Shown piece by piece: positions 17,093 to 17,798 of a DNA stretch of 64,000 nt. A model generated the notes under the pieces. That model made no database searches. It was not told where the DNA came from and saw only the letters and a program-made list of their open reading frames with translations. This DNA comes from Selaginella moellendorffii. Lineage: Eukaryota > Plantae > Lycopodiophyta. Each line of letters starts with the position of its first letter. Position 1 is the stretch's first letter. Made by a program: the position numbers and the translations under genes. The stretch spans positions 364,278 through 428,277 of the forward strand of contig NW_003314352.1 of the NCBI RefSeq assembly GCF_000143415.4, written 5' to 3'.

Positions 17093-17798
17093 ATGAAGGT
17101 GAAGGTGCTGAGTATCCTTGCTCGATCTATTGCCATTTGTTTTCTTCTTTGTTGTGATCTCCTTGACTGCTGGCTCTCGCGATCGGCTCGGCATTGTAAA
17201 TCTTAGAGTAAGTTTCTCTCTCTCTTTTTTTCTTTCTTCTCTACGAGACTCGTTTTTGTAGATGGCACGCTGTGGCTTCTTGGACATGGGATGCGCACGA
17301 CGACGCCTGTGGGATTTGCCGAATGGCGTTTGATGGATGCTGCCCGGATTGCAAGATGCCCGGCGACGATTGCCCTCTCAGTAAGTGGTTTTTTTTTTGT
17401 CCTCTGGTGTCTCTATTCTCTGTTTTCGTTTCGCACACTTTGGCCCTCTCTTCGAGCGAGCTCTCTCGTCGAGGGAAGACCCGAGAAGGTTTTCTAGTGC
17501 TAGAGCGATCTTCGCAGTGAAATCGATCGATTTTTCCGCAGCTTCTAAGCATGCAGCTGCGAGAGATCTCTTCACTGGACAGAGTCAAGTTTGTTAGTTT
17601 GGCTTTCCTGTTTCCTTTGTAGTCTCTGATTGTTATCGTTTGCTACTGACTACCTGTGTGTTTTCTCGGTTGTGATCTACAGTTTGGGGAGCTTGCAATC
17701 ACGCGTTCCACCTCCATTGTATTCTCAAGTGGGTGAACTCGCAGAGCCCCCGACCACAGTGTCCTATGTGTCGCAGGGAGTGGAAGTATAGAGCATGA
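17093..17798 (+). CDS. APC11: Anaphase-promoting complex subunit 11 (RING-H2), 84 aa; exons 17093-17111, 17207 (1 nt), 17262-17380, 17683-17798
   Basis: Joined exons total 255 nt and read MKVKVLKWHAVASWTWDAHDDACGICRMAFDGCCPDCKMPGDDCPLIWGACNHAFHLHCILKWVNSQSPRPQCPMCRREWKYRA*. The frame closes only with the single A at 17207 (ttag|A|gtaagt). Confidence 0.92.

What the first reader, a model, noticed from the sequence alone, without database searches (positions are those of the whole stretch)
17093..17262. APC11 requires a single-nucleotide exon between a U12-type intron and a U2 intron
Seen: exon 1 (ATG AAG GTG AAG GTG CTG A) ends at GTATCCTT, the minor-spliceosome 5' splice-site consensus. A U12-like branch site TCCTTGAC lies at ~17160-17167. 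The first AG after it (17205-17206) is followed by a lone A and a perfect U2 donor GTAAGT. Joining exon 1 directly to 17262 is out of frame, whereas A+A+A gives AAA (K) then TGG (W) and an 84-aa APC11. Known: a 1-nt exon has been reported in Arabidopsis APC11. Inference: the 1-nt exon is ancient in vascular plants, and here it is defined by two different spliceosomes. That could force ordered splicing (U2 intron first, then U12), making APC/C output depend on the minor spliceosome. The branch-to-AG distance of ~40 nt is longer than typical for U12 introns.
Basis: partly seen in the sequence, partly recalled or inferred. Interest (0 to 1): 0.85.

Follow-up and report, generated by a model that had tools for sequence, protein, structure and literature searches.

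The report
One-base exon behind a minor-type intron
The spikemoss cell-cycle gene APC11 really contains an exon one letter long (already published for plants), and the intron in front of it carries minor-spliceosome (U12) signals that are kept from liverworts to flowering plants, which I found in no searchable paper and which may explain why so small an exon is not skipped.

Summary
Observation confirmed to the base. The window is Selaginella moellendorffii. An RNA-derived contig joins 17111 + one extra A + 17262, then 17380 to 17683. A17207 is the only AG|A|GT site between the two exons. With it the CDS gives an 84-aa APC11; without it the frame breaks.

The 1-nt exon and its conservation in land plants are already published (Guo & Liu 2015; Yu et al. 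2022).

The part I could not find in the searchable literature is the type of intron 1:
- The donor GTATCC is invariant in 8 of 8 land-plant orthologues, whereas the donors of introns 2 and 3 vary as U2 sites do.
- A YYCTTRAY branch motif lies 36-45 nt before the AG in all of them, followed by an AG-free spacer.
- That spacing is far from the 11-13 nt U12 optimum, yet it is conserved.
- Closterium has a U2-type donor at this intron.

U12 dependence is inferred from sequence and conservation only; it was not tested functionally. The scan noted the same idea earlier on another piece of this genome (s1-411630).

Verdict: known exon, apparently unreported U12/U2 flanking, moderate-to-high interest.

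The parts
17093..17111 (+). APC11 coding exon 1 (19 nt, MKVKVL + first base of codon 7)
   Evidence: Sequence; the RNA contig ends this block at 17111; homologous exon 1 in 8 other taxa.
17112..17206 (+). Intron 1, 95 nt, phase 1, GT-AG, U12-type by sequence
   Evidence: Boundaries follow from the joint plus the unique AG|A|GT site; donor and branch motifs.
17112..17119 (+). U12-type 5' splice site GTATCCTT
   Evidence: Matches the consensus RTATCCTTT (PMC1635337). GTATCC is invariant in 8 of 8 land plants (alignment A1).
17160..17167 (+). U12-type branch site TCCTTGAC (branch A 17166), 40 nt before the 3' splice site
   Evidence: Matches the consensus TTCCTTRAY (PMC1635337). A homologous YYCTTRAY motif lies 36-45 nt upstream in all taxa. 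An allele in run X1 has G>A at 17165, giving TCCTTAAC.
17205..17206 (+). 3' splice site AG of intron 1; first AG after the branch site
   Evidence: There is no AG in the 37 nt between the branch motif and this AG.
17207..17207 (+). Single-nucleotide exon (A), second base of codon 7 (AAA, Lys)
   Evidence: Extra A in the RNA contig (table 5c); only AG|N|GT site in the interval; needed for the frame.
17208..17261 (+). Intron 2, 54 nt, U2-type (GTAAGT...AG)
   Evidence: Sequence. The donor of this intron varies among taxa as U2 donors do: GTAAGT, GTAGGT, GTATGT, GTACGC.
17262..17380 (+). Coding exon 3 (119 nt)
   Evidence: Joints at 17262 and 17380 in RNA contigs of X1, X2 and X6.
17381..17682 (+). 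Intron 3, 302 nt, U2-type
   Evidence: Joint 17380 to 17683 in three runs.
17683..17798 (+). Coding part of exon 4 (stop TGA at 17796-17798); the 3' UTR reaches at least 17833
   Evidence: Translation; X6 contig 12 runs to 17833.

Best explanation
[quoted passage not shown] Its reading frame needs a one-base exon, A17207.

The intron upstream of that base (17112-17206) has the donor and branch site of a U12-type (minor-spliceosome) GT-AG intron. The intron downstream (17208-17261) is an ordinary U2-type intron. The AG of intron 1, the single A and the GTAAGT of intron 2 therefore form one composite site that works like a recursive splice site leaving one base behind.

Shown here:
- The mRNA carries the extra A.
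- Donor GTATCC, branch motif YYCTTRAY, an AG-free spacer of about 40 nt and the AG|A|GT site are kept from liverwort and moss to flowering plants.

Inferred:
1. Intron 1 is removed by the U11/U12 machinery.
2. A U12 donor cannot pair with a U2 branch site and acceptor, so the one-base exon cannot simply be skipped.
3. The unusually long, conserved branch-to-AG distance leaves room for the U12 snRNP on the branch site and the U1 snRNP on the adjacent GTAAGT at the same time.
4. Intron 1 tends to go first. That recreates a normal donor (GAA|GTAAGT) behind a real exon, and intron 2 then follows.
For: - RNA contig with 17111 + A + 17262.
- Unique AG|A|GT site.
- 84-aa product with the A, frameshift without it.
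- Identity with S. moellendorffii GL377656.1; the public model carries Pfam zf-ANAPC11.
- Donor GTATCC in 8 of 8 land plants: Selaginella, Riccia, a moss metagenome contig, Arabidopsis, Aquilegia, Magnolia, Glycine, Acorus. The donors of introns 2 and 3 of the same genes vary.
- A YYCTTRAY motif with its branch A 36-45 nt before the AG in all 8. The background chance is about 0.004 per taxon.
- The spacer has no AG apart from ones 2-5 nt after the motif.
- An allele in run X1 changes the branch site only from G to A at the R position.
- A second RNA-level case: moss contig L011 is exon 1 + A + exon 3 of genomic L008, whose donor is GTATCCAA.
- Consensus sequences and classifier rules come from PMC1635337 and PMC7367187. 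The latter's classifier searches for the branch site at -55 to -5.
- Partly spliced contigs keep introns 1 and 2 together.
Against: - There is no functional test of U12 dependence.
- The branch-to-3' splice site distance of 40 nt (36-45 nt in the other taxa) is far from the 11-13 nt optimum reported for U12 introns (PMC3584512).
- No conserved hairpin shortens that distance.
- In angiosperms the branch motif is weaker: CTCTTGAC, CTCTTAAC, TTCTTGAC.
- Closterium seems to have a one-base exon between two U2-type introns. If real, the U12 donor is not strictly required for such an exon.
- The evidence on order rests on assembled contigs from four runs. Contigs drop rare forms and their depths are unreliable.
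- The moss RNA contig has introns 1 and 2 removed while intron 3 is kept, so intron 1 is not always the slowest.
Confidence: 0.8

Rival explanations
1. Intron 1 is removed by the major (U2-type) spliceosome, or by either spliceosome, despite its U12-like motifs. On this view the conserved motif about 40 nt upstream is simply a plant U2 branch site (CURAY-like).
For: The branch-to-AG distance of 36-45 nt is typical of U2 introns and not of U12 introns (PMC3584512). Several taxa have a pyrimidine-rich spacer. Closterium has a U2 donor at the same intron with a similar branch-like motif 36 nt upstream. [quoted passage not shown]
Against: GTATCC, preceded by A or C at -1, is a very poor U1/U6 site. 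It is nonetheless invariant in 8 of 8 land plants, while the true U2 donors in the same genes drift. Three taxa have a perfect 8-nt U12 branch consensus. Land plants have an active minor spliceosome (general knowledge).
Confidence: 0.12
2. One reading: the U2-type intron 2 is removed first, and the slow U12 intron 1 afterwards.
For: It is mechanistically possible. For the potato invertase 9-nt exon, the downstream intron is reported to go first (cited in PMC4674806). U12 introns are generally slow (PMC3584512).
Against: Four runs gave no contig with the 17207-17262 joint and intron 1 retained. The partly spliced contigs (X6 record 12, X1 record 4) run unbroken from 17166 to 17291 or beyond, so they keep intron 2 together with intron 1.
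Confidence: 0.25
3. The extra A is an artefact (assembly or sequencing error), or the true gene model is the public 86-aa one (MKVK-TRFCR-WHAV), which avoids a one-base exon.
For: The NCBI model P0003 uses donor AAG|GT at codon 4 and the acceptor at 17247.
Against: The RNA contig contradicts that model. The same exon 1 + A + exon 3 form appears in a moss RNA contig. Intronless grass APC11 reads MKVKILQWHAV, with the middle base in place. Mutagenesis in Arabidopsis showed the single A is the source (PMC4674806).
Confidence: 0.02

Closest known systems
Single-nucleotide exon of Arabidopsis APC11 (Guo & Liu 2015, PMC4674806), and its conservation in land plants (Yu et al. 2022, PMC8831610)
   Same: Orthologous gene. 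The exon sits at the same codon (codon 7, between MKVKxL and WHAV), is the same base (A), and has the same AG|A|GTAAGT context. The public annotations are wrong in the same way. A putative branch A was noted 44 nt upstream in Arabidopsis.
   Different: Neither paper, nor the held supplement text of PMC8831610, mentions U12 or the minor spliceosome. Here intron 1 is read as U12-type and its signals are traced across land plants.
U12-type GT-AG introns (U12DB, PMC1635337; intronIC/IAOD, PMC7367187)
   Same: Donor GTATCCTT; branch site TCCTTGAC; phase 1; strong conservation of both motifs in orthologues; a U2-type version in one lineage (Closterium), as expected from U12-to-U2 conversion.
   Different: The branch site lies 36-45 nt from the 3' splice site, not about 11-13 nt. 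The 'downstream exon' is a single base abutting a U2 donor.
Recursive splice sites (ratchet points, AG|GTAAGT)
   Same: A 3' splice site and a 5' splice site are juxtaposed, so a stretch is removed in two steps. [quoted passage not shown]
   Different: One base is left behind, not zero. The total stretch is short here (150 nt). The two steps would use two different spliceosomes.
Exon-definition crosstalk between U12 and U2 introns (Wu & Krainer 1996, as reviewed in PMC3584512)
   Same: A U2-type donor downstream of a U12 intron can stimulate its splicing. Exon skipping around U12 introns is rare.
   Different: Here the bridging exon is 1 nt long, so any such contact must span the branch-to-AG spacer and not an exon.

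Membership tests
U12-type (minor-spliceosome) GT-AG intron | 5' splice site matching RTATCCTT(T) at +1 to +8 | tested here: met
   GTATCCTT at 17112-17119, exactly at the RNA-verified junction. GTATCC in 8 of 8 land-plant orthologues.
U12-type (minor-spliceosome) GT-AG intron | Branch site matching TTCCTTRAY inside the region classifiers scan (-55 to -5, PMC7367187) | tested here: met
   TCCTTGAC at 17160-17167, with the branch A at -40. A homologous motif occurs in all taxa.
U12-type (minor-spliceosome) GT-AG intron | Short branch-to-3' splice site distance (optimum 11-13 nt, PMC3584512). This is a typical property, not a classifier criterion. | tested here: not met
   40 nt here and 36-45 nt in the other taxa. 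Only the moss has an additional CCTTGAT motif at 16 nt. I therefore call the intron U12-type by sequence criteria but atypical in spacing.
U12-type (minor-spliceosome) GT-AG intron | No marked polypyrimidine tract | tested here: inconclusive
   Pyrimidine fraction of the spacer is 0.47-0.67 depending on taxon.
U12-type (minor-spliceosome) GT-AG intron | Splicing depends on the U11, U12, U4atac and U6atac snRNPs | not testable with these tools
   Needs mutants, knock-downs or crosslinking.
Plant APC11 single-nucleotide exon | The mRNA holds one base that is contiguous with neither flanking exon | tested here: met
   tables 5 and 5c (X2 contig 10). Moss contig L011 compared with genomic L008.
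Plant APC11 single-nucleotide exon | A genomic AG|N|GT site between the flanking exons, at the orthologous codon, that restores the frame | tested here: met
   The site is unique in Selaginella, Riccia, Arabidopsis and Glycine, and present in all taxa. Frame test.
APC11 / zf-ANAPC11 RING-H2 protein (PF12861) | Pfam zf-ANAPC11 match and an APC11-length protein | tested here: met
   Precomputed PF12861 and PF12678 hits on P0003, which shares exons 3-4. The spliced product is 84 aa.
Recursive splice site | Juxtaposed AG|GT with zero exon bases, inside a long intron, with both steps by the major spliceosome | tested here: not met
   One base is retained, the stretch is 150 nt, and the first step looks U12-type. 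It works like a recursive site but is not a member.

The most novel reading that the evidence does not exclude
In land plants the one-base exon of APC11 is made possible by pairing two incompatible spliceosomes.
- The U12 donor can only use the U12 branch site in front of the single base, and the U2 donor behind it can only use the U2 acceptor. Skipping is therefore mechanically excluded.
- The conserved spacing of about 40 nt between branch site and AG lets the U12 and U1 snRNPs sit side by side.
- As a consequence, production of an essential APC/C subunit, and hence cell division, is gated by minor-spliceosome activity in most land plants. The intronless monocot copies are the exception.
Probability: 0.35. 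Interest if true: 0.75.

Novelty: new variant of a known kind. Interest (0 to 1): 0.6.

Why it matters
How a spliceosome can define a one-base exon has been open since 2015, and the original authors could only suggest 'intron definition plus recursive splicing'. If the upstream intron is U12-type, this gives a concrete and testable answer. Two spliceosomes that cannot mix enforce inclusion of the base, and the odd conserved branch-site spacing becomes a prediction and not a curiosity.

It would also add APC11, an essential cell-cycle gene, to the list of minor-intron genes in plants. U12 scans that interpolate introns from gene annotation (the approach described in PMC7367187) would probably have missed it, because every public gene model I looked at is wrong at this intron. 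Finally, it offers a candidate link between minor-spliceosome mutants and cell-division phenotypes.

Tried and rejected
- A hairpin between branch site and AG that would shorten the effective distance: the spacers of 9 taxa fold no better than shuffles (z from -1.6 to +1.6), and Riccia has no structure at all. Rejected.
- A second, closer U12 branch site: found only in the moss (ACCTTGAT at 16 nt). No other taxon has a match with 2 or fewer mismatches at 8-25 nt that is also shared.
- Over-representation of the motifs in the window: none.
- Other routes to the extra A, by shifted junctions or alternative donors and acceptors. The neighbouring bases are both G. The other in-frame model (the NCBI 86-aa model) is contradicted by RNA.
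- Literature searches:
  - APC11 + 'U12-type intron': 0 papers.
  - AT3G05870 + U12: 0 papers.
  - APC11 + U12: 2 papers. One was read and does not connect the two. The other is a Shigella colicin paper, judged irrelevant from its title.
  - The supplement text held for Yu et al. has no mention of U12.
- Papers not held: Zhu & Brendel 2003, Dietrich 2001 and Lewandowska 2004. As a result, the limits of branch-site distance in plant U12 introns rest on the review alone.
- The Diphasiastrum locus was not on record.
- Contig L012 (unknown organism) lacks exon 1.
- I did not fetch the contig of P0001/P0002, an animal-like repeat of APC11 exon fragments.
- No formal U12 position-weight-matrix score was computed, because no published matrix was available to the tools.

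Full report
**What is there**

- ATG at 17093, and a 19-nt first coding exon ending in A17111.
- GTATCCTT at 17112-17119.
- TCCTTGAC at 17160-17167.
- The next AG at 17205-17206, a lone A at 17207, then GTAAGT at 17208-17213.
- An acceptor AG at 17260-17261, with exon 3 starting at 17262.

The stretch is identical to Selaginella moellendorffii GL377656.1. The best named protein hit is that species' APC11, with Pfam zf-ANAPC11. Splicing 17093-17111 + 17207 + 17262-17380 + 17683-17798 gives an 84-aa RING-H2 protein. Without A17207 the frame breaks.

**RNA evidence**

I laid the contigs of four public runs on 16700-17950.
- Run X2 holds a 718-nt contig that lies on 16700-17111, then has one letter A that fits neither side, then lies on 17262-17380 and 17683-17712. 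Three introns are missing from it, so it is RNA-derived.
- The bases flanking the skipped part are both G, so shifting the junction cannot produce the A. A17207 is the only AG-N-GT site in the interval.
- The public 86-aa model (MKVK-TRFCR-WHAV) is therefore a mis-annotation.
- A second RNA-level case came from a moss. Contig L011 (about 96 % identical to genomic contig L008) aligns with L008 exon 1, then has one extra A, then aligns with exon 3.

**What is already known**

Guo & Liu 2015 (PMC4674806) proved the one-base exon in Arabidopsis APC11 by mutagenesis, and noted a putative branch A 44 nt upstream. Yu et al. 2022 (PMC8831610) showed that the exon is conserved in land plants and lost by retroposition in most monocots. 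The exon itself and its age are therefore not new.

**Is intron 1 U12-type?**

The published consensus is RTATCCTTT for the donor and TTCCTTRAY for the branch site (PMC1635337). A current classifier scores the donor and the best branch motif between -55 and -5 (PMC7367187). Intron 1 matches both motifs perfectly.

In the window alone the motifs are no more frequent than chance, so I compared orthologues. Loci were fetched for Riccia, a moss from two JGI metagenomes, Arabidopsis, Aquilegia, Magnolia, Glycine, Acorus and the charophyte Closterium.

| Feature | Result |
|---|---|
| Intron 1 donor | GTATCC in all 8 land plants: GTATCCTT in six, GTATCCTG in Acorus, GTATCCAA in the moss |
| Donors of introns 2 and 3 (same genes) | Vary as U2 donors do: GTAAGT, GTAGGT, GTATGT, GTACGC, GTTCTT and others |
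| Branch motif | All 8 have a YYCTTRAY motif with its A 36-45 nt before the AG\|A\|GT site; background chance about 0.004 per taxon |
| Spacer between branch motif and AG | No AG apart from ones too close to the branch |
| Allele in run X1 | Differs at four intron positions; the one inside the branch motif is G to A at the R position (TCCTTAAC) |

Together this is strong evidence that donor and branch site are under selection as U12 signals. It is still sequence-level evidence only.

**The anomaly**

The branch site lies 40 nt from the 3' splice site (36-45 nt elsewhere), against an optimum of 11-13 nt for U12 introns (PMC3584512). I tested whether a hairpin shortens the distance and found none that is conserved or better than shuffles. 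Only the moss has an additional CCTTGAT motif at 16 nt.

The long distance is conserved for roughly the age of land plants. I therefore read it as tied to the one-base exon. With a 12-nt spacing, the U12 snRNP on the branch site would collide with the U1 snRNP on the GTAAGT that starts one base after the AG. That reading is inference.

**Mechanism**

A U12 donor cannot be paired with a U2 branch site and acceptor. Skipping the single base (17111 joined to 17262) is therefore not available to either spliceosome. This would explain constitutive inclusion.

Closterium, with a GTGAGC donor and a candidate AG|G|GTACGT site, suggests that the one-base exon may predate the U12/U2 difference or survive conversion to U2. 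That case has no RNA support here.

**Order of removal**

- X6 contig 12 runs unbroken from 17166 to 17380 and then jumps to 17683. Intron 3 is gone, while intron 2 and the 3' part of intron 1 are still present.
- X1 contig 4 likewise spans 17166-17291.
- No contig shows only one of introns 1 and 2 removed.

However, contigs drop rare forms and their depths are not reliable, so the evidence is weak. The moss RNA contig, which keeps intron 3 but not introns 1 and 2, shows that intron 1 is not always last.

**Novelty**

Full-text searches found no paper that links APC11 with U12, and none of the microexon papers mentions U12. The published gene models I looked at are all wrong at this intron (and Guo & Liu for TAIR). 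Annotation-based U12 scans would therefore probably have missed it.

The scan itself noted the same reading earlier on another piece of this genome (s1-411630). That is not independent evidence.

**Limits**

- No raw reads were available.
- No position-weight-matrix score was computed.
- Ferns, gymnosperms and hornworts were not sampled.
- I did not fetch or compare the animal-like contig behind P0001/P0002.

Noticed in passing
window 17968-18101 (+): Fragment of eukaryotic small-subunit rRNA (Rfam RF01960, 59.8 bits, model positions 42-467), about 170 nt after the APC11 stop codon. From about 18110 it is followed by very AT-rich sequence of different composition. It looks like an rRNA pseudogene piece at an insertion boundary.
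   Followed up: partly
window about 14100-17028 (-), L001 1-2936: Head-to-head neighbour: a 1413-aa protein with RSE1 beta-propeller and CPSF_A domains (CPSF160-like by length). Its start codon is only about 64 nt from the APC11 ATG. RNA contigs run unbroken from 16700 or further upstream to 17111, so the two transcripts overlap at their 5' ends or share a bidirectional promoter.
   Followed up: partly
L001 3001-3706 (P0003); also P0007, P0050, P0051, P0106: Public gene models of APC11 in Selaginella, Riccia, Arabidopsis suecica, Closterium and Acorus all avoid the one-base exon and give wrong N-termini. The Acorus model reads through the U12 donor as Arg-Ile-Leu.
   Followed up: yes
L004 2926-3660 (Closterium sp. 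NIES-64): Candidate one-base exon G (AG|G|GTACGT at 3238-3246) behind a U2-type donor GTGAGC. The start of exon 3 is duplicated as a truncated copy about 110 nt upstream (3426 and 3539). There is also a run of tandem repeats of about 25 nt in intron 1. No RNA evidence.
   Followed up: partly
window 17133-17165, run X1: A second allele or copy of intron 1 in run X1: G>T at 17139, T>C at 17148, G>A at 17165, and one base missing at 17133. This may be the other haplotype or one of the extra APC11 copies mentioned in scan note s1-411673.
   Followed up: no
window 49111-49121 (-), 26772-26779 (+), 38940-38947 (-): Other RTATCCTT matches. The one at 49111-49121 reads GTATCCTTGAC, but it seems to lie inside an open reading frame. 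They are probably chance matches, since the count equals expectation.
   Followed up: partly
window about 16037 and 16111-16118 (+): ATATCCTG and TCCTTAAC lie 74 nt apart on the + strand, inside the neighbour gene on the - strand. This could be chance or an antisense U12-like pair. Not examined.
   Followed up: no
P0001, P0002 (ENA contig of 17250 nt): Animal-like predicted proteins made of tandem repeats of the APC11 exon piece (the ICRMAFDGCCPDCKLPGDDCPLGK unit, several times). I left them alone and did not fetch the contig.
   Followed up: no
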